DNA from: Macrostomum lignano
Lineage: Eukaryota
Assembly (NCBI GenBank): GCA_002269645.1
Contig: NIVC01000796.1
Coordinates: 1-29,497, forward strand
DNA: 29,497 nucleotides
Reading direction: 5' to 3'
A program made the position numbers and the translations under genes. Below the pieces are notes generated by a model that was not told where the DNA came from, did no database searches, and worked only from the letters and a program-made list of their open reading frames with translations. Positions 7,102 to 27,910 of this stretch are shown here, in pieces (position 1 is the first letter of the stretch; every line of letters begins with the position of its first letter).

Positions 7102-7250
7102 TAGCACAATCGCGGCACAGTGCCCAGCACAATTCCCGTTAAATATACGCGTAGCTAAGCGCAGCACAACTGTATTGTCTGACAGACAGCACTACTCACC
7201 GGCTATTAATTTAGGGGAATTGTGTTAGGCACCTTGCCGTGATTGTGCTA
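7102..7250. repeat. Imperfect inverted repeat: arms of about 43 bp, 64-bp spacer, two GCACAAT boxes per arm
   Basis: Reverse complement of 7102-7144 (ATTTAACGGGAATTGTGCTGGGCACTGTGCCGCGATTGTGCTA) aligns with 7209-7250 (ATTTAGGGGAATTGTGTTAGGCACCTTGCCGTGATTGTGCTA). Confidence 0.9.
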
Positions 7251-7359
7251 GCACTACAGCTACTATTGCTACTAGAGTGTTAAAAGAACAAAAGTAGGTG
7301 CACACTACAACTACTACAGTGTACTATAACTAGAATTAGTAGGCGGCTGAGGTGAGGCG

Positions 7360-7419
7360 AGGCAGATAAGAAATTGTGCTTGGCACCGGAGGTGCCAAGC
7401 AGCAATTTCAAATCTGCCT
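7360..7419. repeat. 60-nt hairpin
   Basis: AGGCAGAT-aag-AAATTGTGCTTGGCACC-gga-GGTGCCAAGCA(g)CAATTT-caa-ATCTGCCT. Confidence 0.9.
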
Positions 7420-7768
7420 GTGGTAATTAAGTACACACTAGCTATAGAGCGTAAAAACAGCAAGAATCGGGGACTGGCAGCTATTTATGGCCAATAGATT
7501 GTAGCTATACAATCAGTCAATAGCTGATAGCCTGTGTGGATAATAGGCGTAGGGGTATATGATGCTGAACGCGGATGTTACAACAAAATAAATAGCCAAC
7601 TATCTAGACAAAGAGGGAGCAAACACAACCTGCACCACGCGTAGTGCAACCACCACAGTGTCACATCGAGCGTGCAATGAAACATAGGGAGAGAAACAGC
7701 AACGACACATACATAAAAGGAGACGGCTTCCAAAGGTCAGACACATGCCTGTCGCAAAAAGTCGCTTA

Positions 7769-9326
7769 TTAGACAGAGGCCGACACGCGGCACAATTTAG
7801 GTTTCTTACTGCCGTTGCGTCTGGCTTTGCAGCCGGACGTCGCCGCCGCCGCATCGGACCAGTCGAACTCCGCCGCAGCCGCCGCCGCTGCACTGGACAG
7901 CAACAAGGAGCGCGTGGCGTCCACAGCAGCCCGCCGTTTCGACGCGAGTTGCGGCACTGCAACCACCTCCGAATGCCGCTGCTGTTGCTGCCGCTTCTGC
8001 GACATTGGCTGCTGCCGCTGCTGAGTCGGCAGCTCCTGCGAGACCCGAGCGGCGATCAGCTCCCGCTGCTGCTGCTGCTGCTGCTTCTGGGACGTTGATG
8101 CTGCCCGCTGCTCAATCATTCCGCTGACGGTGACCTGCATTTCTGTACGACTGGCGAGCACAGCGTTCGGTGCGTAGTGTCGCATAATCATGGTTGTCGA
8201 AGTCTCATACAGCGCCGCCATCTGCTGTATTAGATCAGGGTTGTTCGCCATGACGACGTCCTGCGTCGAGCTGCGGAACACAGTTGGCCCGACGCCTTCC
8301 CGATGTAGGATGCCAGCTGCTCCGGATTCCACAGCGTGGCTGAATGTCGACGGAGACATACGCGTGCCATTGCGGGTGCAAAATACAAAGACCTCGTCAT
8401 CATAGGCGCAGTTGCCGAAGCTCGCGCCTCGACGCCACTTGCGGAGCATCTCGACAAAAGAAGTTGGCAGACAGAGCACGCTGCAACCGACAGACTGGCG
8501 TTTCTTGTGGCAAAGCCTATCATTGTCCCGCCTATAGATGCTGTTTGGCTCCAAATAGGCCAGGCGAAGGCCGCACCATGGCTGGATGCGCAGAGGATGT
8601 TGTACCGTGGCATGCAGCGCAAACCGATTGCGCAGCTGGACCTCCTCAGCGTTAAGGCGGACACCGCCGCTGCCGCTCAGCGCCGCGACAGTTTCGTCAT
8701 CGTCTTCGTCATCTTCGTCAACCTCGATATCGCCAGACTCGTCGCCGTCACCGCCGCCGCCGCCGCCGCCGCCGCCGCTGCTGCCGCCGCCGCCGCTACA
8801 TCGGCACAACCGATGGGTTAGCAGCAGCGGACTCCAGCCGTTGACGCTTCGGCTGCAGCGCTGTCGGGGCACTGGTGAAGGCCTCCTCGTCGGCGAAGAG
8901 TTCCAGCTTGATAGTAGCCGCGACCGAGCTTCCTTCGTTGAACGAGTCATCTTCATCACTGCTGGAAGGCACCACGACGTTTGACACCTTCGTGATGACG
9001 CATTCATCGTCCGCGGCTGCGTTCGATTCGGCCTGGGTCGCTGGCGCGAGCACGACAGGTAGCACTTCCGGCGCCGCCGTAGCAGCCGCCTCAGCAGCGC
9101 TGCAGGCAGCCAGAAGTTCCGCGTCGAAGAAGACGTCTTCTTCGTCATCGTTAGCCGTTGGCTGGTTTGATTCGGTGGCGGCAAGATCGGCTGCAGTCGC
9201 CATCAGGTCGGCATCTTCAGCTGCATAGGCAGCTTCGAAGGCCGCATCGATTTCCGCATCGGTCAAGGGGTACCACACGACCGAGTTGTTGCTGTTGTTG
9301 CTGTTTTTGTTGTTGCTATAGCTCAT
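7769..9326 (-). pseudogene. Tyrosine-recombinase-like gene, copy 1 (acidic N-terminus plus catalytic domain; frameshift near 8800)
   Basis: HPLR (Arg), HKK (Lys), PTVFRSS (Arg) and MRHY (Tyr nucleophile) appear in YR order and spacing. The acidic N-terminal ORF 9326-8796 is in a different frame. Clear paralog at 27911-28906. Confidence 0.7.
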
Positions 9327-9904
9327 AGTTGCGTTAAAAGCAAATTAATTCTTTTAAATTCGAGTGCTGCAGTTTGCTGGAAAGGAGGCAGGATAATTAC
9401 ACTAAGAATTATTAAGCAGCACTAAGCTTTACTTTTAAAATATACAAGTTGTAGAAACAGTAACTAGATACTTATATGCATACGAGTTTTTTTACTTATT
9501 GAAGTTGGCCAATAGATTATTGCAGCGGGCGGGATGCTGTGCGTTTCACCCCGTTTCAACACGCCTAGGCTAACTATAATATTTGATATATTGCGATACG
9601 GCAGATAGTTTGGGCCCTAGACAAACCTACTGGAGCAATTGGAGATTTTAAAGCTATTAGTCCTATTTGTCTATCGCCGGTCGGCGAATCCTACCAAGCT
9701 TTCTTCAATAGTCGCAGATACGGTACAAGAAAATGAATAACACGGTTGAATGCAATTCCAGATAGATTTAGATTGAGTGGTGTTCCTAATCTGACAGAAT
9801 GACTGACAGAGACTTGAATTGAATCCTTTAATTTAATTAACTCCAAATATACACGGATTGAAATAACGCAATTCGCAATTTAACACTTGACAAATGATGT
9901 ATAT

Positions 9905-10038
9905 AATCTTTGTCTGTTCTTTTGGTTCCTTTGGCAGAGAAAGGCCGAGGACGCTGTTCTCAGGCCGAGGCGAAGCCGAGGCCTTAGAATTGCGTCCGAG
10001 GTCTTTCTGCCATAGACACCAAAAGAACAGACGAAGAT
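9905..10038. repeat. Imperfect palindrome of about 130 bp centred on GAGGCGAAGCCGAG
   Basis: TTTGTCTGTTCTTTTGGT..GGCAGA..GGACGC on the left mirrors GCGTCC..TCTGCC..ACCAAAAGAACAGACGAA on the right. Inner arms TTCTCAGGCC / GGCCTTAGAA. Confidence 0.9.
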
Positions 10039-10254
10039 CGTACTTAATCTACAAATATTGGAAGCGACTGGGAGTGGGAGAGAGGTATTCGTCAAAAGCG
10101 GGGGTGTGGGCCCCCCACATTTAACCATAGACAAAAATTAAAGTAAAAGGTTCGATGCTTAAATTAAAAGCGAGAAAGGAAAGGTTTGGGCAGCTAGAGG
10201 AAATCAGAGAGAACTGAGAATCATGGAACGCGACTTGGAACTCGCTTTCGACTG

Positions 10255-10545
10255 GTGAATGACATTGAACTGAGAGAAAACGAGGCTTCTAGATTTGCTT
10301 TACTGTCCGATAACGAGGTTGCTGAAAGGATTGACGCTGCTGTGCCGGAATCGACACGCCGGAAGGAACGATGGGCACTAAAGCAATTTGACGACTGGTT
10401 TCAGGAGAGGCAAACCAAACTGCTTCATGGAGACGCCTGCGGTCTATCTGTGTCTACCTATCGGCCGGCATACTCTCGACTCCAATTGTGGCGAATATCA
10501 CCAAACCCGTGTCTACGGATGGTAAATTCTCAAACCAGTCTCTAA
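10255..10545 (+). pseudogene. Crypton-like (KCTD1/ZMYM-related YR) N-terminal fragment
   Basis: RFALLSDNEVAERIDAAVPESTRRKERWALKQFDDW resembles the Crypton core-binding N-terminus. Catalytic domain absent. Confidence 0.65.
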
Positions 10546-10800
10546 GGAAGACTTGTGCCAGCAGGTTGCATCGGGCTGGACTGGCTAGAGACGATGGAGT
10601 CCAATGGGCGGACCAGTCGTGTCTGAGGGTACTACCAAGAAGATGCGCATGACTGTCCACGGTGACACCAACAGCGTAGAAATCATGTTCGAGTAAATCG
10701 GCAAGAATGAATCGGTCTTTACTGCTGTTGATAGTTTATACTTCTAATGGACTAACTGACAAATTATAGTCGTTCTAAAATATTCTCAGGCCTTGTTCTT

Positions 10801-10826
10801 AGGCCTGTTAACCGGTTAACAGGCCT
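10801..10826. repeat. Perfect 26-bp palindrome
   Basis: AGGCCTGTTAACCGGTTAACAGGCCT is its own reverse complement. Confidence 0.95.
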
Positions 10827-11769
10827 CGTTTTGAGTTCTCAGGCTTAGTTTTTTAGTGAGGTTGGCCATAGACTATCGTTCTACTAGAAAAGAAGGAGCC
10901 TAGGAATTTAGTGTGAACCGTCATATCTGTAGGTTAAAATAAAATAATTATCACAAATTGGTGAGCGGATCTCAGCACTGGAAGAAGTGAAAAGATGAAA
11001 CCAGGAGCACAAGACTAACGGAGAAGCTCCCTAACACCACTGGCCTAAATCCCAAGGTCCTACTCTCAGACGAGGACACTGACGGCCGGACAGTTCAGCG
11101 AATCCCTGGCCAAATTCTACCAGGTATGCCTTTCAGTGAAACACTGGGGCCCTCAGAATCGAGGTCGCGTACTACGTCAAACCGACAGTTCCTATCTTGA
11201 CCACGCTTGCCGGCGACAAACTCTGAACAAGGTTGTCGCGATTGTTACGCCGGCAATGCTATTGCGGTCGGGCAGCGGAAACAAAAAAGGAGGCCGGGGC
11301 TTGACTCAATAAAAGCTCCTCAAAGCGCGGCAGATGGCAAAACGGCCGGGAGATAAGAACGAAGCCAGGCCAAAACCAGAAGTAAGATCCGACCGCCAAA
11401 ACATACTTTCATAGTCTCTCCAACCCCCCCCCCCTCAAGCCGGGTGGTGGGTGTCTGGCTGGCCGCTCGATAATCCAAATTGCACTGATCCTGCGGCGCG
11501 CTCTCAAGCCGGGTAGAGCTGGTTTGCCGCATGCCAGGGGTCCAGGCCGGTCCTGATTGCCTGGCAACGCAAAGCCGGAGTACATTGGCAAGTTTGCCAA
11601 GCCAGAGCCACACTGGCTTGGAAATGCGTCTAGCTTTTCCGACCTGTTTACTATAATAAACTTGTAAAAGCACTTTGAAAAACCTGACTAAAAATAGAAT
11701 GGAAACACAATTAATAATTAATGACAATTGAAGGCAATTTACATAAGATGCTCACATTACAGTCACCAT

Positions 11770-12340
11770 CTGCGACACAATGGCTCCGCTGACTCTCCAG
11801 TCAGACCACCGACTTCTGCTCGGCGACTTGCGGCTCCGCGACCAGCTCTACCGACCGCCAAAGCAGCGACCACGGCGCTACTATCACGCTCTGTTGGACA
11901 CCCGCGTCAAGCGTCAATTCGCGGGCGCCTTCGTAGGCGCGCTTGGAGACCAGCGCGAGGCGGAATATTCCGACATCAGCACCGTCGTTGGAGCCGCTGT
12001 GGAGCAAACGGTTCCGCTGATGCGGCCAGCGAAAAAATTGCTGCCTGTCTGGCAGAGCGACCCGACCATCAAGCAAGCGCAGGCTCAACATCGAGCGACT
12101 CCGCAGAAACCGGTGGCCCACAGGCGACGCTGAAGACGCGTCTGAGCGCCTTCTAGACGAGTGGCAGCAGGCCGCTGTCAACGACGCCGTTAGGTCCATC
12201 ACTGCAGCCGGCCGCTGTCAACGACGCCGTTAGGTCCATCACTGCAGCCGGCCCAGACGTGATGAGCCGCGTAGTGGGGACGGCCGTCCGGACTCTGACG
12301 GGGCGCAAAAGGCGCGTGGCGCTGAATCTGACCGGTGACA
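11770..12340 (+). mobile_element. Non-LTR retrotransposon fragment (end of APE endonuclease plus linker), decayed
   Basis: SDHRLLLGDLRLR endonuclease C-terminal motif. After removing a 40-bp duplication the linker reads VRTLTGRKRRVALNLTGDT. Confidence 0.65.
12171..12250 (+). repeat. Exact 40-bp tandem duplication
   Basis: GCCGCTGTCAACGACGCCGTTAGGTCCATCACTGCAGCCG occurs twice. Confidence 0.95.
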
Positions 12341-12344
12341 CCGG

Positions 12345-12821
12345 TGCACGCCTACGAATCTGCGGATGTCGCGGTCGGCCATCGTCGCACTAACACCGCG
12401 AATAGCGTCAGTTAACGGCCGGCCAGTTAGCATTGAGAAGCGCCGTTAGACGGTATCGAATGGCATGCCGTCTTCGTCGCCTGCGTCTACAATTGTGGCT
12501 AGCGCCCAGACGACGGACTCGACACACGCCATCTGCAAGCGTATTAGAGGATGCGCGTTTTGTGAAATCAGTAACATTACAATGTCTATACAAGCAGTAT
12601 GTTAATAAATGAAAGCTAATTACGCGTACGCCGTGAATAATTTCATCGAATGTCTGTTGGAGCAACTGGACGGCGACAGGGTCTTCTGGGTTAACAGATG
12701 CGGCGGCCGCAGGAGCGCGATCCTGGCTGGAAGTTGTGTGCGCTGCTGCTGCGGCTGTGATTGTCTCGTCGTCAACGATGTCACCGTCGACGTACAGCAG
12801 CCCTGTGCTGTAGACGGCCAT
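12345..12821 (-). pseudogene. Unidentified spliced gene fragment
   Basis: 64-codon exon from ATG 12821, a phase-0 97-bp intron (GTACGC..CTAAT..TTGCAG, 12629-12533), then MACVESVVWALATIVDAGDEDGMPFDTV*RRFSMLTGRPLTDAIRG with one stop. Truncated against the LINE fragment. Confidence 0.35.
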
Positions 12822-13787
12822 AAATTCTCATGTTTGAACAGCCAACGCTCTGGGCCGCTTCAAACAGTGATCGGCTCGGTATTGGTCAGCAGGTTTTGTT
12901 AAGCTCTGTCAGGCTCTTTCGGCTGTTTTGCTGTGCAAATGCCTGATGTGGTCGAGTTACACGGACCATCATTAGAAGATTCTAGTGCAGCTGCATGGCT
13001 AAGCTGTTTAAATTTTCATTGGTCAACTGCGTTTTGCAGTAGATTGCAGACGCTGAAATTGCAGGATACATTTATCGTCGGATTGAACTCTCACTGTATT
13101 GTAAGTAATGTGATGCACATACAACTGATAATAGTACGACTAAAGTAATAAAAAGACTATTTAAGTAAAACTGTAGCTAAAATATGCAGAATGTATGACT
13201 ACATAGGTTATAAGGGCAGATGGCACCGTTGGCGACGGTTAAGTAGTTTAAAAATGCAAGCAATTTAAAGATTGATGTGTACTGTTGTAACATACAGTAA
13301 TATTATTGTGCATTGTGTCTATGAAATTGCACTCAATGCGTATTATTCCTATGGCGAATACCTGCTGCTCCTTTTATGTTGCGTGTTTTGCTATTATGCT
13401 TTGTAAGCAGGAGTGGGTGCATAGGAGCTGAAGAGATACAAGACAGAACATGGCCCCTGTAGCATAAAGTGTATCTGTTGTGGATCCAATTTAAAAAAAA
13501 TTGATATACGCGCCATGACCCTTTAATATACGCGCTAGTGTACCTACTACTGAGACTACCAATATTAAAACGATAAGAAATAAATGAAAGCTAAACGCAG
13601 CAGAAAAGGTAAATTTGTAACTTTACTTGCGCCAACTGCACAGGATTTTCACGATAATATGAAGGAGGGGAACAGCATTTACTTAAAAAAGATACCCTCC
13701 TCCTTTTTCAACCGGGCTTGGGACTGGCTTTGGCTTTTACCCATCCACCTCGTATTCTGTATCAACTGTTCTAGACTTGATCGAAGC

Positions 13788-14027
13788 TTTATTACCCCTC
13801 GCATTAAAGATTGGCCCGCGTAGTCAAATAAAAGTGACTACTCTCATCATGGCGGGACTTTATTATTACCCCTCGGATTAAAGATTGGCCGCGTAGTCAA
13901 ATAAAAGTGACTACTCTCATCATGGCGGGACTTTATTATTACCCCTCGGACTAAAGTTTGACCCGCGTAGTCAAATAAAAGTGAATATTCTATCAAAGCG
14001 AGGCTTTATTACCCTGCGGATTAAGTA
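13788..14027 (+). repeat. Tandem repeat, unit about 73 bp, just over 3 copies
   Basis: ATTACCCCTCG.A.TAAAG.TTG.CC(C)GCGTAGTCAAATAAAAGTGA units start at 13791, 13865, 13938 and 14008. Confidence 0.95.
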
Positions 14028-15579
14028 TTGCACATTCTTTTGAATTTTTGCCCCTCTTTTAACTTGGAAGTTCCATTCACTTTAGACAACCCATGAGCAT
14101 GCCCAGACTTGCATGCCCAGACTGAAGACTAGATAGCGTCTGCCTTAATAGGATAATCTGTGTTTAACTCACTGGGCCTGCTGGAACATAATTGGAACTA
14201 TGCTACAGATTTCGGCTAAGACACCCAGCTGTACAAAACAATATACATAGTTTGTGTCTTGGCCTAATGACCGACGGACGGGATGGGGAGCGGGTCCTCC
14301 CGCCGGAGACACCCAAGGTCCCAGCCCCAACCCTGGCTATGCCTACGCGACCCTGACCGACCCGGCGAGATTTCGCCCTGGCCGATCACCCTGGGACTAG
14401 CGAGAGTTCGCCGACCTCAGGTTCCTACTCAATCCCACCGGCCCCTCGCGGCAACCCAGAAGAAAGAAGCGCGAGCTCACTCCTAGTCATCGATTTAACA
14501 GCTTGACGAAGCGTATATTTGGCCGACCAAACGCAGAGCAGCACAAACAGCAACGGACGCAGAACGCAGACAAACAGACAAACAGTGGGGCGCAGAACGC
14601 GGAAAACAGTGGAGCGCAGAACAGACAAGCAGTAGAGCGCAAATCGCAGACAAGCAGTGAAGTGCCGAATGGGCAGGGCGAGAACTTAAATAGAATACTG
14701 TACACCAGAGGGGGGTAGAAAGGAGAGGGGCAGGCCAAACCCTGGGGCTTAAGGCAGCTTATCAGCCCGCCAGTCAATGCGAGAGGCCCAGGGTGGGGCG
14801 GAGCAAAGAGGGAGGGGTAGGGCAAGCGCACAGATTGGAAAGGGGACTGGGCGCAGAAAAGACTAGGCCATGGTAGAAGCTTACGCCTCATAAACCCCGG
14901 CAAGGGCGCGAGACGGTGGACGGGGCGGCGCAGCATGAAAACACGAAAACAAAAACAAGGGGCAACAGAAGGGCAGGGTAGACTGAAAGGGCGCTGCACA
15001 AGAATAGGATGCTTCAGAAGTAATTAGAATAGTCTGAGTGCAACACATCCAAAAGGCATCCTCATTTGTTGTATGGTACAGTACACAGACTACATGCTAA
15101 CGGGAGTCAAACCTTTGTACACAATAATGCAACTACCTTGCACTAAATGCAAATTAGTAGAGTATACAAAGGATGGTTGCGACCTCACATTACGAGCAAT
15201 ACAGTTTCAACAAGTCCTTTATTTAATGCAGAGGTTTAGCGCCACTGACTAGGTGGATTCCAGGGATAGCTTGCCGGGGTAGCTTGTTATGTCATTAAGT
15301 ATGACAGCCTTCCATCGGAAGCACTCTTATTTTATCCCTAACTTTCGAATCTTGTCTTGTCATGATTCGGACCTTGTTATTTGGTAAAATTCGGATTGCT
15401 CACCAGATTAGAGTCAAACCAGATAACATTAAAATTACCTGGTAACGAATCTGGTGGTTTTACCAGTTTCGCACCCTAAACAAGCATTGGAAGTATAGTG
15501 AATCTGACAAGATTCGCAAATTATCTTGTGGTGTTATCTGGTTTATTTTCCAGAGGGAGTGAGCTAGCTACCGGTTAGG

Positions 15580-15630
15580 TACAACAGTAACAACAACCAA
15601 AAGCAACAACAACAACAAAAACAACAACAC
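15580..15630 (+). repeat. (CAA)n microsatellite, possibly a LINE tail
   Basis: CAACAGTAACAACAACCAAAAGCAACAACAACAACAAAAACAACAAC. Confidence 0.8.
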
Positions 15631-15849
15631 TTGGCACCTCGTCTACGTCGCGGAGGGTAGCCGCTTCATCTGGGGGCGGTCAAAGAGCGCCAAAACTCGG
15701 ACACAACGTCGAACGAGCGAGTTTTTTGTATTTACACTCTAAAGAATCTCGCTCAAAGCGATCATCCACCAAGCCGCGGGAGCGCCCTGCTCATCAACGC
15801 AAGCGGAACTCTACGTGGTCAAGCTGGCCTAAATTGGCTCGAAGGGCGC

Positions 15850-16440
15850 ACCAGCAAAGGAGAAAGCACCGTGATCATTAGCGACAGTCAGAGCACTCTA
15901 CAGGCTATTAAGGGCTTGAGCAGAAACACCTTGGCCATTAGAGTCAGGAAAATGCTGAGGAAGCTGGAGGAGGAAGAGAAGGTGGTTAAGCTAATCTGGG
16001 TGCCCGCGCATTGCGGCTTGACAGGAAACGAGTTGGCGGATGAAGCAGCGAAAGAGGCATCAACCTGGGCCCAGGAAGGCATCAAAGTGCCACCCAGCAG
16101 CAACAGGAAGTACAGCCAGAGCAAGCTGGGCAGAGATAACGGCAGAAGCCACAGGAGAAGCAGGGAAACCTATGGAGAGCAGGGGGCGGAGCCCCAGCCG
16201 AAGGGCCTGAGCAAGCAGGAAGCGTTTGACTTCAGACGATTCAGGAGTGGCCACTCTATGGACCTAGCAGAGTACAGGAAGCGCATAGGTAGACAAGAGG
16301 AGGGCTGGTGTACGAGCTGCGGCTTGGAGACCGAGACGCTTGAGCATGTCATGGCGTGCCCCGTCACGCGCAGCCTTAGGGAGGAACTGGACCTGCATGA
16401 GATTCGAGTCTTGAGTAGGAGACCAGGGAATCTGCAGCGT
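15850..16440 (+). mobile_element. Non-LTR retrotransposon 3' fragment: RNase H plus C-terminal zinc knuckle
   Basis: IISDSQSTLQAI and LIWVPAHCGLTGNELADEAAK (RNase H); RFRSGH...CTSCGLETETLEHVMACP (CCHC). Confidence 0.9.
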
Positions 16441-17665
16441 CAGAAACAGCACCTCAAAGATTGGGCACCACGCTTAAAAAGGCCCTTTTCCGAGCACAAT
16501 CTCCCTGGCGTCGATACAGACGAAAACATCGCACCTGTATCCATCGACCTGAACTGTCCGTGACAATGTATCGGCTTCAAACTTGTCTTGACACTTTCTG
16601 AACAAGGAAGGGGACATCCGAATCGAGAAGACAATTGCAATTTTGCATGTTCGAATCATATTAAATTCAAGTGGAAGCAAAAATCATTTCGTAATACTCA
16701 CATACCAGGTACTGATGTTGTAATACGATAACAACAGCTTAATTACTTCCAGCGCAGAACTATTAGCTTATTTTCCCGTAGTCTAACCAGGCTTGTATCG
16801 ATAGAATCCAGGACAAGAATCTTTCGTCGCTTAGCACACACAACGATAAGATAAAAGTGCTCCTTGTGTAAAAAAGGATTTAATGTCTTATTCAAGCCCT
16901 GGGAAATATACAGTGAACTAGAAAATTACGAGCTAAAAACAACTTTGCATTTGAGAAATGCTAGAGTTACTACGAATTTACTTTTACATACATGTTACAA
17001 GAAAAAGCAATTATTCGTACCTTATACACTAAAGTCCTTTTCGACAAAATTTTCCTCTTAAAAGTAATATTGTTATTATTGATATCCAAAATGCTGTGAA
17101 AGTCTCCCTTGCCAATGACAAATTCGTTGGTGCGCCTGAAGTAAGTGCTGTGCAGTAAGCCGGTAATATCTACACCTTTTTCCATTCTATTTTGGCAAAC
17201 GTGCAATCAAAGTCAAAATCTTTTCATTCAATTCAGACAGTTTATGGTAGTTCTTGGCCGGACGTGCATTCAATTCCGACAAATGTGCTTTCAAAAGCGA
17301 CAATTTTCAAACAAAGCAAACAAGCTACCACGAGAAACCGACACTTTGCAATCAATTCAAACAATTTGCAATCCATTCCGACAGTTGGCTATGAATTGGC
17401 TTTTTTCTGTCCTCCTATCTATGGCTCATACTAATACGCTCGTAATGCCGAATGCAAAAGTGAGTGACAACGATCGGCAGAGGCTCATCGACGCACACGC
17501 AAACGGAGACGATTTTGGGCATCTTGCTCGAGTATGTACTCCAGTGGCTTGTCTAAATAGATTGAAATTTGTCGGAATTGATTGGAAATTTCGCAGTATG
17601 AGCCATAGATAGGAGGACAGAAAAAGCCAATTCATAGCCACTGTCGGAATGGATTGCAAATTGTT

Positions 17666-18530
17666 CCCTTTTGTCTATGGTTTCCGGCATTCATACTTGC
17701 GGTAACAATTTAATTGTTTGTCGGCTTTTTTCGATTGTTGCCGGATTTCAGACGAATGTATTTGGCTATCAAAACAAGGAACAACAATAGCAACACGGCG
17801 AAAGTGCTTTCGAAGGGATGAATAGAAAAGCCTCAGATAATCGTTCAAAAATCGATCCGGAACACGCTCAAACTCCTGGCAGAGCCCCTTCTCGTTGAGG
17901 AACTGTCGGAACCTTGCCACGTGAAGCTTCCGTTGCGTCTCGGTCGATTTCGGCACTGAGTCACTCTCAAGTCGGTCCAACATTTCCAGATCTTCGCTAC
18001 CTAGCTCAGGCAGCCCGTTGGAACTGGACGACGCATCCAGGTTGTCCATCTCCAGAACGTAGCGCGTGCTCGACTCTCGGGTGACAAAAGCCAACTCGTC
18101 CGTGGAGAGTCCACATATTTCTCCGCCAGGAATGTTTGCGTAGCGAATCATAGCTACTTTTCCTATTTGCACTCCGAATAGGAGAATTAATTCAAGCTCA
18201 AAATCAACTTGAGAATTAACTCATGGCAGCCAGGCTAGCTGTCTTCACTGTCCTTTAAATTTGCCATAAACGATTAATTATCTCTACAACCCTTTCATTT
18301 AGAGAGCAACTAAATTTGCCATTGACGATTGATTATCTCTACAACCCTTTCAAAGCGCATTCCGGCAACAATCGCATTTCATACTCAGCATCCGCACTAT
18401 GTCTGGGCCATAGACAAGGGAAGTCAAAAGGGTACAATAATGACATGTACCGATTTTTTTCGGCAGCAATTGCGCGCTTCAGCTTACGCAATTGCTGCCG
18501 AAAAAAATCGGTATATATCGTTACATTGTT
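17666..18530 (-). mobile_element. Non-autonomous Crypton-like insertion, 865 bp
   Basis: Flanked by a direct ATTGTT. Encodes DSVPKSTETQRKLHVARFRQFLNEKGLCQEFERVPDRFLNDYLRLFYSSLRK (Crypton/KCTD1-like N-terminus). Inverted CCCTT(TT)GTCTATGG / CCATAGACAAGGG at 17666 and 18408-18420. Confidence 0.75.
18448..18513. repeat. Perfect hairpin: 27-bp arms, 12-nt loop
   Basis: TACCGATTTTTTTCGGCAGCAATTGCG-cgcttcagctta-CGCAATTGCTGCCGAAAAAAATCGGTA. Confidence 0.95.
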
Positions 18531-19734: not shown

Positions 19735-20500
19735 GTCAGAGACTGAGCAGTCGCTCAGTGACGTAGCTGTCGTTTAGGCCTTGCATGAACTGCTCGAGAA
19801 CTATTTGCTCCACAAAGACCTGGGCTCCCAGTTCCGGGTGCGCCCGAATCGTCAACCGTTGAAGCTCCATCGGGTACTTTTAAAAGCTCTCGTCAGATTT
19901 CCGATGTCGAGCACGGAACTCGCGATGAGGAAGGGCTGCAATCTTGGCACCACCGTGACGTGAGCGGTGGTGTTCTACCAGATCCTCGTAGTCCACCCTA
20001 GGTAGCTGATCCAATGTTAACCCGGGTGGTAGACCGAAGTACGCGCACTGCATTGCCAGCCAGGTAGTGTACGTTGCGTATGCCGGACCTTCTCGATGTC
20101 CGGGAGGCCGGGGAATCGACCAATGTGAGCGCCGATCCTGACGAGGAAGTCGTCGAAGTCTTCACGGCCGTTGTATGGCGGAGGATTTGGCTCCGAGGGA
20201 AGAGCAAGCCGTTGATTAGCCACTGGCAGTGCTGCATAAGCCAGCAGGAGGTTAGGCGGGGCGTACTCCAGCTCCGGGACATGTCGAGCTGGACGGTGAA
20301 CATCTGCATGGAACAGGTTTATTGAATACGACTGCGGCTGTGTCATCCGTGGATCTTCGTCTGTGATGAATGGGTTTGTCGATCTGCTGGCTGCTGCAGA
20401 CACAAACGGGTTGTACGAACTCGAACTGGACGCGATGCTTGGCTCCGCTGATGCAGCTGCATCTGCCGTGTTTGCTCGTCTGACGAGTCGTTCTCGAAGC
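19735..20500 (-). pseudogene. gag: Ty3/Gypsy-type gag pseudogene
   Basis: PPPYNGREDFDDFLVRI, YLAGNAVRVL, YEDLVEH..REFRARHRKSDESF, ELQRLTIRAHP, EQIVLEQFMQGL, read across frameshifts and stops. No pol present. Confidence 0.8.
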
Positions 20501-21479
20501 TCCAGGATGTCGTCGTCGTTCGGGACTCGTTCTACATAATGAAGCACTAGCGTGGTCGCCAAATATAAATGCCCACGTCTCAGTTTGAAATAATGAAGTC
20601 GTGCAGACACCAGGCAGTTACTTGTTGGCTGAACTCATTGGTCGAAAGGAGAGAAAACCCTTAAAGATTCTGGCTCAAACCATTACTGTATTTATAGTGA
20701 TTGGCGATGATTCCAGATTACGTGCGATAGCTTAAAAGCGTAATTCACGTGCAGGACTAAAACCGATTCGAGCATCTAAGCGAGTCGGGGAAACGAGGCC
20801 CGGAGGGAAATTTGAGGCCTGTGTGACTTTTAGTGTGAGCTTGTGTGAGCTTTTCTGTGTGAGCTTTTAAGCAGGGAAAAGATCACACACAAAAGCTCCC
20901 ACAAATGGTGAAAACGCTCGCACAATGCAACGATCTCTACAGATCTCGGAGATTTAGGTGTAAAATTTTCACCCCACCTACTGACAGTAGGCTACTAAGT
21001 GGATGTAACGTCCCGTTTATATAGTTAGTAGCATATGCACCTGATTTTGACTTTATAGTTTTGCAATTGAATGTCCATGCAATTGCACGCTATGGCGTAG
21101 TACTGCAATTGTGGTTACGATTAGAAGCCACAGCTTCCTCTAACGAAGAGAGAGACTAATATATATGTAGATACACAGCATTTCTATTCGACTGGAATAC
21201 AGCAGTCAGATGCAGAAGGAAGCAGTGCGTTTTACAATGTAATTAAACAGAATGCAATGCGATCGAAGTTGCAAAAAGCGCGAAAGAAGGCAGCTGCAAA
21301 ATGTACGGATAAAGGCTTTGCCAGCCAGTCGCCTCGCGTACTCGCAGCCTTGCCACACCGTGCACGCTGCAGCGTTGATCTTGTTGGCAGTCGTAATCCA
21401 ATGCTGCGTGACATCTTGGGCTGTAATGCAGCAGCCCAGTGGCAAGACGCAGAGATGCCTGAGGCCAGACAGTATACGT

Positions 21480-21591
21480 ACCTCTCACGACTCTTAATTG
21501 GAAACTTGTGGAAGCGAAGTCCTGGTACATTTCTATCCGCATATGATCTGCATCCGTACGATGCGCACTGCAGACGTGGCGCTGTCGGCAT
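21480..21591 (-). pseudogene. THAP zinc-finger N-terminal fragment
   Basis: MPTAPRLQCASYGCRSYADRNVPGLRFHKFP matches the THAP C-x4-C...FHxFP start. The remainder is broken. Confidence 0.65.
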
Positions 21592-24145
21592 GACGACCCG
21601 AGAAGACGAGAAGCTACCAGAAACAGTTGATTTATTGCAGCTGCAGTAGTGGAAATTAGATAAAACCAAGAAGCGTATGGAACGCAACAGTATTGCGGAG
21701 GCAGCCGATGAGAAATAACAAATGGTTGAAGACAAGATCCATCCAAATAGTAATGAGTTGAAGGAATATATGAGAGTATAGGAATGCAATGTTTAAGCCA
21801 TTGACAAAATAGTGGTGATAATCGCGATAATCGGTGATCATCGCAGGAGTTGCATGTCATGAATACATTTTTGCCACGTTTTTTTATGCAGAGGGGTCGA
21901 TTGAGCATTCTGGTGTATTCTGTAGTCTCAACCGCCTCAGCTGGAGGTTCCGTCGCAGCGGCCGCAGCAGTCGCTGCAGCCTCAGCCGGACGCTCCGTCG
22001 CAGCAGTCGGAGGAGTCGTCGCAGCCGGAACCGTAATATGTGCTGCATGTCCCGGCACATGTCGAGAACACGTGCCACGTTCTCAGCTCCTGTCTCCATG
22101 GACGCAAACTGCCTGCTGATCTGGGCATGAAACTCCGCTGCCTCCCGGTCCCGATCGGCGAGTTCCGCATGCAGCTATTGACATCGCATGCATGGCATTG
22201 GGATATGGGCAGCGTCTTGGCAGTGCTCGTCTGAGCCGGTCGAGCAACCAGACTGCGAAACTTCTTAAAGCTGGTTGAGAGCGACAGTGCTAGTGCCTTG
22301 TTGTCCACGGCGTCCGTTAAGACGGAGGCACGCTGCACACGGTTTCTTCCACTGAAACGCCTGCCTCCCTGCCGTAACAGAGGTTACTCGGAAGAGACGC
22401 TTCGCTGTCTTCATTGAACACCGCCAGCTGTTGTCGACCAGCTACAGCAATCTCCTGCGGCGTTGTACTATTATCATACATTACGACATACCAGGAGCCA
22501 CAGTCTGCAACCAGATGACGGCAGATATGTAATAAAATGCACCTGTCGGAAAGCGTATGATATGTCGTCTGAGTAACATCTGGCATTTGATTACCGGCGT
22601 TCGCCATTGGCAGGGAATGCAGCGCGTGCGATCTGCAAAAGCATTAATGCAGTAAGTCTGTATAGCAGCCAGCCACAGTGGCCACAGGTACATGTATTCA
22701 CATTTTTAGTACGGACAAAGAAATTAGGCATTACTAAAGAATTGATTTCTGGCATAAGTTTTTTTTTCTAATTTACATAATTTATGTTTTATTGAAGCTT
22801 TAATGAAGCTGAAATTCTTCATTTCCATTGGCTTCAATTTGAAATTGTACAGTTTTAGTTAGCTTTCTTGGGCATTTGGTATACTTAATAGAAAAAGTAT
22901 ATTTATTAGAAAGTGAAATTCTAATAGCATTTTTCAAGCTAGTAGAAAGTGCGAGCATGGAACTAAATACACCATTTTACCCTCGATTTTGAACAAGAAC
23001 TTCAAAACCGACAAACCCCTCTTCAATATTGACACTCTATGGTCGGGCACTCAAAATCTACAATCGATATTGACAGATGAAGCTTTAATTTTGACAAACT
23101 CTGGTTCAATTTTGACGATGCACTTTTAGTCATCTTCTGGGAGAATTGTGAATTCAGTAATAAAGTAATCCAATGAAAGCCTGAACAGGGCTGAATTATC
23201 TGGGCAAAATCAGCTCATTCTGACTTTGCTTTTGGGATCTACAAGTATTGATAAAATTGCATGACACGCGAAAAATAACTATCCCCATTTTTTCGACACT
23301 ATTTCGGCTAAAAATCATTAAAACATAAAACTAAAAGACCTATAGGCCATATGAAAAAATGAGAAACTGCTCCAACTCAAGCATTTACTCGGGCCTGTAT
23401 GAATAAACTGAGAAATTTTTCTCAAGAGAATTCGCTCAGATTTCAGAGCAATTACTCAGGTCAATAAGAATAAAACTACTACCATAGACTAAATTTCTGA
23501 GCAATTTAATGAGATTCCTCATTAAATTCATTCCTCATTCCTCATTCCTCATAAATTTGATGAGGACGCACTTTTTTCCAAACCCGCGCTAGCACATGGG
23601 CTCTAAACTTACTAGCCTACTAACAGTGGGCAATGGGCATTTTTATCCTTTTTCTGCGATTTGTCGTATAATCTATAGTAGATATAATGTTTGGTCATAC
23701 TAGTAGTCGTAATAACATAGGCGCAGCTTTTTGGGTCATAAATCATCGCTCTCGAAGCTGGTTTGACAGCCACCTGCGCCTCACTCAGTGTTGAGGCGGG
23801 CGCCAGATGTCTGAGGGGATGCGAATGATAGCTTTTTTCTCATCATTTTTGACAGGCCATCAGATTTATGAGGTCAGAGCCTATTGTTCGGGTTCACTGA
23901 AGCGTGTGACAGTTTTGACAGCTATGCGTTTTACCCCTAAAAGTACTTTGGGATTAGCGATTAGCGATTTCTCTTCATTATCTTCACTTCTCTATTTAAT
24001 AAGAGCTTTCTAATGAATATTTTTTCATTCATTTTTTTCAATTCTACGCGAAAAGTCATAAATCATTTTGTTGCGATTTTGAGTGATTTATGGCCGCACC
24101 TGTCATGTTTTTTACGACCCTGTGGGAACTGATAGGATCTCCCGG

Positions 24146-24277
24146 TCACGTGATTTTGGGTGGCAACTAGCTCATCCAATCAGAAAATTCGACGCTCATT
24201 TTAACAAATCGGCTCAGCCAATCAGAATCGACGTGTTCCATTATAACAAACTGCGGTCCAGTTGGCGGCTATTTAAA
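24146..24277 (+). promoter_or_regulatory. Pol II promoter-like cluster (E-box, two CCAAT, TATA-like)
   Basis: TCACGTGA at 24146, CCAATCAG at 24176 and 24218, TATTTAAA at 24270. No downstream ORF identified. Confidence 0.45.
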
Positions 24278-26744
24278 CCGGTGTTTTTGGCCCGCTCGGA
24301 CTGCAACCTTCTTGCGACCGGGTGCTACCCTTGGCTCCACCGGCCAGGGACTGACCGTCGTTTCTTGATCCCCGGATTGCGACTTCCCCCCGTCATCATC
24401 AAGGACGAATCCCCCCGGTCATCAGCACTGAACATCAAAGTGAAGAGCATCACCTGCTAGCTATCAGCGAAGATTGTGACATCAGCATCATCCCGGGCCT
24501 ACAGCTGCGAAGCACTAAGCCGATTCGGTCACCGTGGATTACCTGGTCTCCGGCTGTTGAGTTTCTGATTGGTTAGGTGAGAGGCTGCCCAAGGACTTCT
24601 AGACTAGCTAGTCTAGCTTGAGGCTGCCTAGACTTGCTAGATTGGGTGATTCCTTATCTGTCCCCTGTTTCAGTAGCTGGATTAGGCGTACACTTTTGCT
24701 CATTTTGTTCAGTAGTGCTGTAATCGAGGCAGAAGTCATTCAATAATACTGCTAGTAGTCTAAAACTCCAATTCAATCTGAAGTGTGAAGTGATCTAAGG
24801 AGAAGGTTAAATCTAACAGTTATTTTTATCGGTTTTATTCCTTTGTTCGCCGATGGCTCAGATGAATAGCTAAGCTAGTAGGCGCCGGTCACAGTGGACC
24901 AATGGCAAGGCAGTTCTCAATCGATCAATCTATCAAATAAGTTAGCGAAACTGCCAGTAGTGCAGAATCGGCGCCAGAGATGTTCTTTGTGCACTCTAAG
25001 TTCGCCAAGCGGCTCGGGTAATGAATCATGCGGTCTCTGAAGTTCGAGTTAGTCTATCATCAGCGCTATGAGAGGCTAGTTGGCGCGTTGAAGGCCAGAA
25101 GTACAATTCCTCGTATTTAGCAATGTAATAGTACATGTAGCTACCCCATAGTCTCGCCACTGCAAGAATCCCTGCACAAGTCCCCTATGTACCTGCATGG
25201 CCAATGCGATCTAGTCCCAGCAGTGTCCCTTATCATCGGCTATGACTTCGAGATTGACAGCAAAAAGACACTAGTTGGCAGGTAAGTGCAAAGCCCCTTC
25301 TAGTCGGAAGCCCGATTTCGAGAGTCCCGGTGTGGTGGGCCAGGATATACGGGCTGGTGGCAGCGAGTTAGCTAATCTGCGGATTAACTAATTTCTACCT
25401 TCAAAATTCTCCCTGCTTGTCTCTCGCTGTCCCTCTCTTAGCTATAGGACCTAGACTGCTCGCCACACGATCAAGCTACCATGGGCTGACCATCTGACAG
25501 GAGTGGGGGGCCGGGACTCTAATTGATTTATTTCTGAGACCTGAGGCCTGAAGGCTTCCCCAAATGGGGGCCGGAAGGTCGAAACCCATCAAATTCCCCT
25601 CGCACCACCGTTCGACGTAAACAATGCCAGTGAGGCCGCGAAAAGAGCGGCCGGAGTCCAGCGCCGGAACGCTATCGCCGACATCATGTTCAGGCATGGG
25701 CCATGACAAACTGCGTCGCTATCCGTACTGACTTACCTCATGCTGCTTACGTTTGCTGTTTTTTATTTGTCTATTGATAAAGCCACGTTAAAGTCTAAAA
25801 CTTGATAAAGCCACGTTAAAGCGAGCGTTAAAGTGTCAACCCCAGCCTGTATATGGACATTCAATGTTATCCTGCCGAGTGCGTTAATGTGGGCCATAGA
25901 GAGTGCGTGAATGCGGTTGCGGCCATAGACAAAAAGAGTAACTATGTTTTATCATAGAACTTGAAACATAGAGGAGATTGAATACATGTATATTATGACT
26001 GAAGGTGGTGTATACGACAATTGCAAACCAAGCAATTATATAGAAAAAGAGTAATAGCACAATTGCGGCAGTGTGCGTAGCATAATTCCCTTTAAAGAGT
26101 ATATAGATATAGATATGTATATGTACCTGTAGCTGGTACTTATAAAAATGGCTGGCTGGCTGGCTGGCTGGCTGGAAGGCTAGTGGCTATATTTTCAGGA
26201 AATTGTGCTTAGCATAATTCCTAAATAGTGCGCGACATACCAGCTAGATAGATAGCAAGCAGCAAGTAAAATTATCAATATGCAATTGTACAGCTATTTC
26301 AATATAGTTATAAATGCCATGCAACATTGAGCGCTATTTCAAAGCGCTTTGAACCCTTCAACCTGCAGCCATGTCCAACCAACCAGCCGACGAAGTAGTA
26401 GCTACTGCTAATATTAAAACCAACACTATACGACTATAGTCTAATAAACGCTAGGAAAAAATGTTATAACAATGGGCACGTAAACAATAAGAGAAAGGGA
26501 TAGAACGCATAGCAACGCGCGCAATATGAGGCGAAGATGCATTGTAATTACGCTCGTATGAGATGAAAATATTGAAAAATATTGGGGCCAACATACATAT
26601 AAAGAGAGATGAGACAGTTACAACAAAAAAGAGAATCATCTACATTTCACTATTACTAATTAATTCAGTTATGTTAATAGCAGCACTTATTAATTAATTA
26701 ATTTACCCAAGAACACTCTAAGTTTGCATAAAAATTTGCAGCAA

Positions 26745-26912
26745 TGGTAAAGCGCACATTTACTAGATTTCATATAATGGTAAAGCGGTATTTAAAGTTT
26801 TAACGTTGTGGTAAAGCGGCCAACAGTTGAAATTTGCAGACAATGGTAAAGCGGTACTATTTAAAGTTTTAACGTTGTGGTAAAGCGGCAAACAGTTAAA
26901 ATGGTAAAGAGG
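26745..26912 (+). repeat. Six TGGTAAAG(C/A)G repeats with spacing of about 33 bp
   Basis: Starts at 26745, 26778, 26809, 26844, 26878 and 26902, partly within a duplicated unit of about 66 bp. Confidence 0.9.
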
Positions 26913-27016
26913 CGGTAGACGCGCAGCATGCCTTGAAATTGTGCAATTTTAGGCTCTAGTGAATTGTGCCATGCCATTTTCAGACAGCAGTATATCTATT
27001 ACTATAACTAATTGTA

Positions 27017-27050
27017 TCATCATCATCATCATCATCATCATGATCATCAT
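27017..27050 (+). repeat. (CAT)n microsatellite
   Basis: About 10 CAT units. Confidence 0.9.
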
Positions 27051-27910
27051 TGATTTCAAATTTATCGAAATGCAGCTGGATGGCACAATTCCATATTTAT
27101 GCGAAGCACAATTTCGTAAAAATATATATACGAATTAGATATTATAATGAGAATTAGCTAACAAGAAGAAGACACAACTAGCTTGGGTCTGCAGCAGTCA
27201 GCCGTAGAGTCTTGATTATTTATATATATCAATATATATAATTTAGGGAAATTGTGCTAGGAACTATTTGGGAATTGCGCTACTGGGTAGCTATATTCAC
27301 TAACTAGTAGACGACTACAAGCAATCTATACTGGCATAGAACTCTGTATAGATAGATAAACATAGCAACTGTTGAATTAGGAATTTCTATAATTATTAAA
27401 AAAGATTTGTATGCAACAATTTACATTATAGCTTTGTCGCAATATTGTCACAGCTATTGTACCGACGATTAAAGTTAGACATTAAATCATCAATGACATA
27501 AACTATTGGTAAGGTAGCTATAATCCGCAGGTTTTGACAGCCTGGGTTGGATGCGTGCGGTACCTGCGCATAATCAATCAATCGATTGATCCCAAAATTA
27601 TGCCGAGCACAAATTATTATCCGTTTCAGAATTATAGTCGATTAGATGAGCTACTACTGCTGTACGTGTTAGTTTATTAACTAGCTATTTAGTTGCGATC
27701 TGCAGGTCATCTCACGCAACACCATGATTAATATGCAATAAATGAATATATATATTTCTAGGGGTATAATTGTGCTCTCGTCATAATTTTGGTATTTCTG
27801 CTGCTGCTACTGCTAAAACAACAACTCTGAGTCTGGCATGCTATAGTCTGGTATATATTCTCTCACCGCCGTTGCGTCTGACACAGAATGCCAGACGTCG
27901 GTGCAGCACT

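What the first reader, a model, noticed from the sequence alone, without database searches (positions are those of the whole stretch)
7104..27280. GCACAATT box pairs with an exact 23-bp period, found five times at two loci 19 kb apart
Seen: 8-bp box + 15-bp variable spacer + 8-bp box at 7104/7127 (+), 7218/7241 (-), 26057/26080 (+), 27083/27106 (+) and 27250/27273 (-). A near-miss pair with a 25-bp period lies at 26937/26962. The spacers differ in sequence while the length is held. All pairs lie downstream of a YR gene. Inference: bipartite protein-binding sites (iteron-like or recombinase arm sites) under spacing constraint, probably for an element-encoded protein.
Basis: partly seen in the sequence, partly recalled or inferred. 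Interest (0 to 1): 0.78.

Follow-up and report, generated by a model that had tools for sequence, protein, structure and literature searches.

The report
Recombinase-linked inverted box modules in flatworm DNA
Downstream of two very old, very divergent copies of a tyrosine-recombinase gene in what looks like a flatworm genome sit small inverted-repeat modules built from a conserved 8-base box at a fixed 23-base spacing. They are most likely the DNA sites that the element's own protein machinery recognises, which has not been described for this class of animal transposon.

Summary
There are 13 exact GCACAATT boxes against 1.6 expected. Eleven lie in two zones totalling 2.6 kb, where about 0.2 are expected. 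Same-strand pairs at exactly 23 bp occur six times, not five (expected 0.005).

The pairs are not free-standing. Each is part of a ~48-bp arm made of an outer box, 4 bp, a degenerate inverted box, 3 bp, an inner box and a short conserved tail. Six arms form three inverted-repeat modules of 145-198 bp (A, B1, B2). A seventh, solo arm lies at 842-884.

The two neighbouring ORFs are a very divergent tyrosine-recombinase family. Their synonymous sites are saturated, so the 65-84% arm identity cannot be neutral retention. Loops vary in length and sequence, while spacing inside the arms is fixed.

Gene end, palindromic boxes and module come in the same order and at similar distances at both loci, and no target-site duplications are seen.

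Best reading (about 0.48): cis-acting protein-recognition modules of a Crypton-like recombinase element. The main rival is an unrelated MITE family. No genome-wide census was possible, and binding itself is untested.

The parts
7101..7148 (+). Arm A+ (outer box 7104, inner box 7127), left arm of module A
   Evidence: arm profile E 3.5e-13
7204..7251 (-). Arm A- (outer box 7241, inner box 7218), right arm of module A; 82% complementary to A+ with 61 nt between the arms
   Evidence: E 6.3e-12; ssDNA fold z -7.6
7360..7419 (.). 60-bp palindrome carrying two head-to-head boxes (exact box at 7372, minus strand; imperfect partner on the plus strand), between the YR1 stop and module A
   Evidence: z -9.8
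7790..7797 (+). Single exact box inside the 3' end of the YR1 ORF
7769..9184 (-). YR1: ORF of 471 aa. Residues about 164-355 form a divergent tyrosine-recombinase catalytic core; the rest is low-complexity.
   Evidence: (phrog_1 integrase E 0.002)
26054..26100 (+). Arm B1+ (boxes 26057 and 26080); 84% identical to arm A+
   Evidence: (E 5.3e-13)
26187..26233 (-). Its middle half-site is the plus-strand box at 26212.
   Evidence: (E 1.2e-11)
26745..26912 (+). Six copies of the 11-mer TGGTAAAGCGG (four exact, two with one mismatch) spaced 24-35 bp; found only in locus B, between module B1 and the 25-bp pair
26935..26971 (-). Variant pair of two exact boxes with a 25-bp period (26962 and 26937); it fits the arm profile poorly
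   Evidence: (E 0.77)
27080..27127 (+). Arm B2+ (boxes 27083 and 27106, both exact), left arm of module B2
   Evidence: E 1.2e-10
27236..27283 (-). Arm B2- (boxes 27273 and 27250), right arm of module B2; positional counterpart of arm A- (75% identity, same orientation)
   Evidence: (E 4.2e-11)
27589..27795 (.). Weaker inverted repeat (34-nt arms, 74% complementary). Each arm carries two head-to-head box-like half-sites (27596/27607, and 27768 plus a degenerate partner). It lies between the YR2 stop and module B2.
   Evidence: (I2)
27911..28906 (-). YR2: ORF of 331 aa. It is 42% identical to YR1 overall and 52% over the catalytic core; R, K, R and Y are retained.
842..884 (-). Solo seventh arm (outer and inner boxes degenerate; the middle inverted half-site is the exact box at 862). 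It lies about 470 bp downstream of the P-loop ORF 1354-2220 (minus strand) and has no partner arm.
   Evidence: (E 1.4e-7; not used to build the profile)

Best explanation
The box pairs are parts of a ~48-bp cis-acting recognition unit (an 'arm'). Each arm has three half-sites of one 8-bp box: outer box, 4 bp, inverted degenerate box, 3 bp, inner box, then a short conserved tail. The arms belong to a family of very divergent, Crypton-like tyrosine-recombinase (YR) elements in a Macrostomum-like flatworm genome.

Two arms in inverted orientation make a module with four strong boxes. One module sits 0.5-0.8 kb downstream of each recombinase gene, preceded by head-to-head (palindromic) boxes.

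Most likely an element-encoded DNA-binding protein, with the recombinase itself as first candidate, binds the boxes as multimers. The fixed 23-bp register would place protomers on roughly the same face of the helix. The inverted arms would give a two-fold symmetric platform for four protomers, the number a tyrosine-recombinase synapse uses. Extra copies (module B1, solo arm at 842-884) would be duplicated or dispersed copies of the same cis unit.

Shown: the anatomy, the enrichment, the constraint on sequence and spacing, and the association with the two paralogous genes. Inferred: that a protein binds, that it is the recombinase, and that the modules act in recombination rather than in regulation.
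For: 1. Strong non-random clustering and exact phasing.
2. Seven arms are recognised by one profile, including one not used to build it. There were no arm hits in 42.5 kb of Macrostomum lignano, in the contigs of the two remote relatives, or in 476 kb of viral loci pre-selected for two exact boxes at 23 bp.
3. YR1 and YR2 are 52% identical in the core. Four-fold degenerate sites are 28.9% identical, equal to the 29.1% chance value. Non-coding arm identity of 65-84%, and 13-15 of 16 box positions, therefore needs selection or later movement.
4. Arms align without gaps, while loops differ by tens of bp and are not alignable.
5. Arms of one module are no more alike (mean 32 of 45) than arms of different modules (30.4 of 45). 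Sequence is kept, not hairpin complementarity.
6. Both loci have the same order and similar distances: a homologous stretch at the gene's 3' end (7804-7849 with 27861-27907, 74%), then palindromic boxes, then a module. A- matches B2- and A+ matches B2+ in the same orientation, at an offset of about 20.0-20.2 kb.
7. No consistent target-site duplication flanks the modules.
8. The genes are recombinase-like. The 4-sequence profile hits XerD, XerA and XerH (E 2e-4 to 7e-3) with box I Arg, box II Arg and Tyr aligned. hhalign to a PF00589-positive relative gives 94% probability.
Against: - Arm A+ is closer to B1+ (84%) than to its positional counterpart B2+ (65%). That fits later copying or movement of arms better than simple vertical descent.
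- The seventh arm has no recombinase gene within 6.9 kb.
- The collinearity is only modestly significant (roughly P = 0.1 for the module distance alone, my estimate).
- Described Cryptons have no inverted repeats, only 4-6-bp terminal direct repeats (PMC3212892, PMC13465315).
- Canonical tyrosine-recombinase core sites are inverted half-sites 6-8 bp apart (PMC3212892), whereas the strong boxes here are direct repeats 15 bp apart.
- The window proteins lack His at both conserved His positions, so they may be weak or inactive.
- The window is rich in unrelated palindromes, so inverted repeats are common in this genome.
- No genome-wide census was possible, and there is no binding evidence.
Confidence: 0.48

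Rival explanations
1. The modules are copies of a miniature inverted-repeat transposable element (MITE) family. Its ~48-bp terminal inverted repeats would carry two binding sites for a transposase encoded elsewhere, as in IR/DR-type Tc1 elements. On this reading they merely landed in the AT-rich DNA next to the two recombinase genes.
For: - Size of 145-198 bp, inverted arms and unrelated internal sequence, which is common among MITE subfamilies that share only their ends.
- A solo arm away from any recombinase gene.
- Arm A+ is more similar to B1+ than to its positional counterpart, and module B1 combines two arm types.
- The region is full of transposon debris: a decayed piggyBac copy and an RNase H fragment.
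- Four of six module ends are preceded by TA.
Against: - No consistent target-site duplication. The TA also precedes three of the six inner boxes, so it is part of the motif.
- All three modules and the extra palindromic boxes fall within 1.9 kb downstream of the only two genes of this family, 8.7% of the window.
- Order and distances are the same at both loci.
- None were found in 42.5 kb of M. lignano.
- No DDE transposase with matching ends is nearby. The piggyBac relatives in M. lignano carry no such arms within 10 kb.
Confidence: 0.22
2. The boxes are binding sites for a host transcription factor, chromatin protein or insulator protein. They would regulate or terminate transcription of the recombinase genes or their neighbours, and were kept because the two genes are old, possibly domesticated, paralogues.
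For: - Sequence, not structure, is conserved.
- The palindromic head-to-head arrangement with 3 bp between boxes is typical of dimeric DNA-binding proteins in general.
- The position is 3' of the genes at both loci.
- The recombinases lack two conserved His residues and could be non-catalytic.
Against: - The box is not enriched elsewhere in the window or in the M. lignano sample.
- A seven-fold repeated 48-bp composite unit in inverted pairs is unusual for ordinary enhancers.
- The surroundings are transposon-rich, not gene-rich.
Confidence: 0.12
3. The arrays are origin-like sites for a replication initiator, for example the P-loop ORF at 1354-2220 if it is a superfamily-3-type helicase. This would resemble the palindromic box arrays plus AT-rich DNA and iterons at origins of small DNA viruses and plasmids.
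For: - Palindromic boxes, AT-rich context (GC 36-37% in 26-28 kb) and a neighbouring set of six 11-mer iterons.
- One arm lies downstream of the P-loop ORF.
Against: - The ORF has only Walker-A-level similarity to anything (AAA_16 E 0.014, below cut-off; no hits among 5.8 billion proteins or in the PDB).
- No such ORF is seen near locus B.
- No viral hallmark genes were found, and no relatives in viral contigs.
Confidence: 0.05
4. The modules act as hairpins. Either they form cruciforms or folded single strands recognised by structure (as integron attC sites are by their recombinase), or they are transcribed into hairpin RNAs that feed small-RNA silencing of the element.
For: Module A and the 7360-7419 palindrome fold far better than shuffles as single strands (z -7.6 and -9.8). 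Two boxes per arm with a variable loop formally resemble the attC layout.
Against: - Complementarity within a module is not better kept than similarity between modules (32 against 30.4 of 45).
- Only 1 of 15 spacer columns shows a compensatory change between modules A and B2 (read from the alignment).
- B1 and B2 arms are only 64-73% complementary.
- There is no Rfam match.
Confidence: 0.05

Closest known systems
Crypton DNA transposons (eukaryotic elements encoding only a tyrosine recombinase)
   Same: An animal-type genome. A gene whose only recognisable domain is a tyrosine-recombinase catalytic core. No reverse transcriptase attached. Old, divergent copies in transposon-rich DNA.
   Different: Described Cryptons have no inverted repeats and are bounded only by 4-6-bp direct repeats (PMC3212892, PMC13465315). 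The proteins here miss Pfam PF00589 and have only two remote relatives among 1.84 billion representative proteins. Element boundaries, copy number and mobility are unknown here.
FLP/FRT of the yeast 2-micron plasmid (from general knowledge, not tested here)
   Same: A eukaryotic tyrosine-recombinase system whose target has three copies of one binding element, two inverted around a short spacer plus one extra. The target occurs twice in inverted orientation.
   Different: Spacings, orientation of the extra element and sequence all differ. The inverted copies there are about 600 bp long on a plasmid. No sequence relationship was found, and the FLP family did not come back as a hit in any search.
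Arm-type sites of lambda-like attP and related integrase systems (general knowledge)
   Same: Several short, phased copies of a box, in both orientations, spread over a few hundred bp beside the integrase gene.
   Different: Those systems have two site types (core and arm) read by two domains of the integrase. Only one box type is seen here, and no N-terminal arm-binding domain could be identified.
MITEs and IR/DR-type Tc1/mariner ends
   Same: Short elements with long inverted arms, each arm holding two direct copies of a binding site. Internal sequence is free to vary.
   Different: No target-site duplication, no matching DDE transposase, tight linkage to recombinase genes, and the box spacing is 23 bp rather than about 165 bp.
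Integron attC sites
   Same: An imperfect inverted repeat with two boxes per arm and a variable-length centre, linked to a tyrosine recombinase.
   Different: In attC the structure is conserved and the sequence is free. Here the sequence is conserved and complementarity is not preferentially kept. attC sites are bacterial.

Membership tests
Tyrosine recombinase superfamily (the two neighbouring genes) | Significant match to the catalytic-domain family model (Pfam PF00589 or equivalent) | tested here: inconclusive
   No Pfam hit for either ORF even at E 5. YR1 hits phrog_1 integrase at E 0.002. A remote relative, P0001 (E 9e-5), is itself PF00589-positive, and hhalign gives 94% probability. The 4-sequence profile hits XerD, XerA and XerH in the PDB at E 2e-4 to 7e-3.
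Tyrosine recombinase superfamily (the two neighbouring genes) | Catalytic residues R-K-H-R-H/W-Y in order | tested here: inconclusive
   Box I Arg, the hairpin Lys, box II Arg and the Tyr are invariant in all four sequences and align to XerD. Both His positions are non-His in the two window proteins. The first is non-His in all four sequences.
Tyrosine recombinase superfamily (the two neighbouring genes) | Catalytic-domain fold | tested here: inconclusive
   Two AlphaFold2 runs gave unusable models (mean pLDDT 33.7 and 36.1). No fold search was made.
Crypton | Element encodes a tyrosine recombinase and no reverse transcriptase or other transposase | tested here: inconclusive
   No RT or DDE domain is attached to either ORF. 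The nearby piggyBac and RNase H pieces are separate, decayed insertions. Element limits are unknown.
Crypton | Short (4-6 bp) terminal direct repeats at defined boundaries; no terminal inverted repeats | not testable with these tools
   Boundaries need several copies or empty sites. The two copies share no alignable DNA outside the core, the arms and a 47-bp stretch.
Crypton | Recombinase groups with named Crypton clades | not tested
   No named Crypton protein came back in any search. No reference sequences were available for building a tree.
MITE | Terminal inverted repeats and small size | tested here: met
   Arms of 44-48 nt, 73-82% complementary for modules A and B2; B1 was not returned as an inverted pair, its arms agree at 29 of 45 positions. 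Modules are 145-198 bp.
MITE | Target-site duplication of constant length | tested here: not met
   No shared flanking direct repeat across the three modules. The TA before the outer boxes also precedes three of the six inner boxes. Old copies could have lost their duplications.
MITE | Many dispersed copies, unlinked to a particular gene | tested here: inconclusive
   Within the window, six of seven arms are next to the two recombinase genes. None were found in 42.5 kb of M. lignano. The source genome could not be searched.
Iterons / replication origin | Tandem, regularly spaced direct repeats next to AT-rich DNA and an initiator gene | tested here: not met
   The boxes are arranged as inverted arms, not tandem arrays. 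The separate 11-mer array at 26745-26912 does fit this feature, but no initiator could be identified.
Integron attC-like folded sites | Conserved secondary structure with free sequence | tested here: not met
   Similarity within modules is about the same as between modules. Only 1 of 15 spacer columns is compensatory.

The most novel reading that the evidence does not exclude
These loci represent an undescribed clade of animal tyrosine-recombinase elements: only two remote relatives among 1.84 billion representative proteins, and both conserved His residues replaced. Their recognition region would be a defined, modular architecture of inverted pairs of three-half-site arms with a fixed 23-bp register. 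That would be the first explicit cis-site architecture for a Crypton-like element, whose recombination sites have so far been reduced to 4-6-bp direct repeats.
Probability: 0.3. Interest if true: 0.65.

Novelty: new variant of a known kind. Interest (0 to 1): 0.5.

Why it matters
Cryptons and related recombinase-only transposons are the least understood class of eukaryotic DNA transposons. Their boundaries are hard to find, and no protein-recognition sites have been defined.

Here a conserved, phased, modular box architecture is retained beside two gene copies whose synonymous sites are saturated. If confirmed, it would give a concrete sequence signature for annotating such elements in flatworm genomes, where most repeats are unclassified. 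It would also offer a candidate recognition site for a very divergent recombinase family.

If instead the modules prove to be an ordinary MITE family, the finding reduces to a repeat annotation.

Tried and rejected
1. Word-indexed searches of 5.8 billion proteins with YR2 and with the P-loop ORF found nothing.
2. An exhaustive HMMER search of 1.84 billion representatives with the two-core profile gave only two weak relatives.
3. Scans for recombinase relatives in viral and metagenome contigs found none.
4. The exact two-box pattern in viral contigs gave 53 single matches at chance level, none fitting the arm profile.
5. A 33-nt degenerate arm pattern gave 0 viral hits and 1 metagenome hit. That hit is a single arm-like match in a 32%-GC contig, with no partner arm and no recombinase, so it was judged chance.
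6. Structure prediction of the recombinase core failed twice, so no fold search was run.
7. Rfam found nothing in the window.
8. piggyBac ends as the source of the arms: rejected. The M. lignano piggyBac loci have no arms, and loci B and C have no piggyBac.
9. The neighbour ORF 28888-29451 as the N-terminal domain of YR2: no support.
10. A conserved stem-loop at the 3' end of both genes: the fold is not better than shuffles.
11. Two ORFs that looked by eye like fragments of another recombinase family (10255-10545 and 17675-18172): no support.
12. The prokaryote genome collection was not scanned, because the window is eukaryotic.
Full report
**Context**

The window is eukaryotic. It has microsatellites, GC-rich coding blocks and AT-rich spacers. 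It holds a decayed piggyBac copy: ORF 4913-5917 on the minus strand, PF13843 at E 6e-34. The best named relatives of that copy are Macrostomum lignano proteins at 81% and 58% identity. At the DNA level it is 75% identical to an M. lignano locus. I therefore treat the source as a Macrostomum-like flatworm. This is an inference from transposon similarity only. An RNase H fragment (15871-16563) and several unrelated palindromes show that the region is transposon-rich.

- GCACAATT occurs 13 times against 1.6 expected.
- With local composition, 3 boxes lie in 7100-7800 (0.05 expected) and 8 in 26050-27910 (0.18 expected). The other 27 kb hold 2 (about 1.4 expected).
- Allowing one mismatch per box, same-strand pairs at exactly 23 bp occur six times against 0.005 in simulations. 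No simulated sequence had more than two pairs at any one spacing.
- The sixth pair is 26201/26224 on the minus strand.
- The 25-bp pair at 26937/26962 is real and lies on the minus strand.

**Anatomy**

The pairs are pieces of a larger unit. The six pairs form three inverted-repeat modules:

| Module | Span | Arms |
|---|---|---|
| A | 7102-7250 | 44 nt, 82% complementary, 61 nt between |
| B1 | 26057-26231 | not returned as an inverted pair; arms share 29 of 45 positions |
| B2 | 27083-27280 | 48 nt, 73% complementary |

Aligned outer-to-inner, the six arms show the following:

| Segment | Arms agreeing (of 6) |
|---|---|
| Outer box | 5.5 |
| Spacer | 4.1 |
| Inner box | 5.75 |
| Next 12 bases | 4.7 |
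| Beyond | 2.7 |

- The spacer is not free. Bases 5-12 of it match the reverse complement of the box at 5-8 of 8 positions across the seven arms. It is followed by 3 bases and then the inner box.
- An arm is therefore outer box, 4 bp, inverted half-site, 3 bp, inner box. The 23-bp period is the sum of these parts.
- The head-to-head arrangement with 3 bp between boxes also occurs alone at 27596/27607. In expanded form it makes the 60-bp palindrome at 7360-7419.
- A profile of the six arms finds them all (E 1e-10 to 4e-13). It also finds a seventh arm, not used to build it, at 842-884 on the minus strand (E 1.4e-7). This arm has no partner. It lies about 470 bp downstream of a P-loop ORF (1354-2220, minus strand).

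**The neighbouring genes**

- ORFs 7769-9184 and 27911-28906, both on the minus strand, are 42% identical overall and 52% over a ~200-residue core.
- Pfam does not recognise them. A word-indexed search of 5.8 billion proteins finds nothing.
- An exhaustive HMMER search of 1.84 billion representatives finds only two relatives, at E 9e-5 and 7e-4.
- One relative carries PF00589. hhalign gives it 94% probability.
- The other relative is 30% identical to YR2 over 183 residues.
- A profile of the four sequences hits XerD, XerA and XerH in the PDB (E 2e-4 to 7e-3). Box I Arg, box II Arg and the Tyr are aligned.
- R, K, R and Y are invariant. The two conserved His positions are not His in the window proteins.
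- Structure prediction failed (pLDDT 34 and 36).

I accept 'divergent tyrosine recombinase' as supported by sequence. Catalytic competence remains open. The 'helicase' is supported only by a Walker-A motif.

**Evidence for constraint**

- At four-fold degenerate sites of identical residues, the two cores are 28.9% identical. Chance from composition is 29.1%. Neutral DNA that diverged with these genes should therefore be unrecognisable.
- The loci indeed share no alignable DNA outside the core, a 47-bp stretch at the gene's 3' end, and the arms.
- Yet the arms are 65-84% identical without gaps, and the boxes match at 13-15 of 16 positions.
- The sequence between the inner boxes differs in length (83, 113 and 136 bp) and is not alignable.
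- Arms of the same module are no more alike than arms of different modules (32 against 30.4 of 45 positions). Only one spacer column changes in a compensatory way between modules A and B2.

What is kept is sequence and register, not hairpin complementarity. That is the signature of protein recognition, whichever protein it is.

**Link to the recombinase genes**

- Both loci show the same order along the gene strand: a homologous stretch at the gene's 3' end (7804-7849 with 27861-27907, 74%), then head-to-head boxes, then a module.
- A- matches B2- (75%) and A+ matches B2+ (65%), in the same orientation.
- The offsets are 19,979-20,216 bp.
- No consistent target-site duplication flanks the modules. 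The TA before the outer boxes also precedes three of the six inner boxes.
- No arms occur in 42.5 kb of M. lignano around piggyBac copies.

These points favour modules that are an integral, old part of the recombinase element. Three things count against a simple vertical history:
- A+ is closest to B1+ (84%).
- B1 combines two arm types.
- The solo arm is 6.9 kb from the nearest recombinase gene.

Some arms have therefore been copied or moved later. The collinearity alone is only modestly significant.

**Mechanism (inference)**

A DNA-binding protein encoded by the element, most simply the recombinase, recognises the 8-bp box. The head-to-head pair with 3 bp between boxes would take a dimer, and the outer box a further protomer 23 bp (about two helical turns) away. 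Two inverted arms would then offer four strong boxes in two-fold symmetry, which matches the four protomers of a tyrosine-recombinase synapse.

It is not shown whether the modules are sites of strand exchange, accessory (arm-type) sites, or regulatory sites. Known core sites have inverted half-sites 6-8 bp apart (PMC3212892). Only the middle/inner pair comes close to that layout.

**Comparison with known systems**

- Cryptons are the closest class, but they are described as lacking inverted repeats (PMC3212892, PMC13465315).
- FLP/FRT, lambda-type arm sites, IR/DR transposon ends and attC each share one formal feature and differ in others. These comparisons are detailed in the structured fields.
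- No relative of the family or of the arms was found in viral or metagenome collections.

**Verdict**

The protein and the process are inferred. The main rival, an unrelated MITE family, can only be settled by a census of the source genome, which these tools could not reach.

Noticed in passing
window 26745-26912 (+): Six copies of the 11-mer TGGTAAAGCGG (four exact, two with one mismatch), spaced 24-35 bp and partly forming a 69-bp tandem duplication. They lie between module B1 and the 25-bp box pair and are absent from locus A. This may be a second binding-site array.
   Followed up: partly
window 7804-7849 and 27861-27907: A 47-nt stretch that is 74% identical between the two loci despite synonymous saturation. 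It is coding at the end of YR1 but lies just past the stop of YR2. It contains a short stem-loop with a variable loop, whose fold is not better than shuffles (z -0.85 and -1.66).
   Followed up: partly
It has no relatives in 5.8 billion proteins, the PDB, Pfam or PHROGs beyond P-loop-level noise. The solo arm lies about 470 bp downstream of it.
   Followed up: partly
window 4913-6476 (-): A decayed piggyBac copy. The ORF covers only the C-terminal 334 aa, whereas relatives have about 560-576 aa. It is 75% identical in DNA to a Macrostomum lignano copy. Its upstream end lies a few hundred bp from module A, so it may interrupt the downstream region of the YR1 element.
   Followed up: partly
window 28888-29451 (-): An ORF of 187 aa that overlaps the start of the YR2 ORF in another frame. 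It shows no detectable similarity to YR1, P0002 or any family. Whether it belongs to the same gene is unresolved.
   Followed up: partly
window 9906-10038, 10801-10826, 18438-18523, 3951-3991, and 17360-17432 with 17595-17665: Five palindromes or inverted repeats without the box, including a perfect 26-bp palindrome and a 73-bp inverted pair at 97% identity. Inverted repeats are common in this stretch of genome.
   Followed up: no
window 72-178 and 899-1012: A direct repeat of about 110 bp (about 76% identical), 830 bp apart. The solo arm ends 15 bp before the second copy.
   Followed up: no
window 13789-14011: A tandem repeat of a 73-bp unit: three copies, 91% matches.
   Followed up: no
window 15871-16563 (+): An ORF with the C-terminal part of an RNase H domain (PF00075, E 4.7e-6), probably a retrotransposon remnant.
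   Followed up: no
L059 831-863 (metagenome contig Ga0316217_10033854): The only match to the 33-nt degenerate arm pattern in the metagenome collection. The contig has 32% GC, no partner arm and no recombinase, so the match is judged chance.
   Followed up: yes
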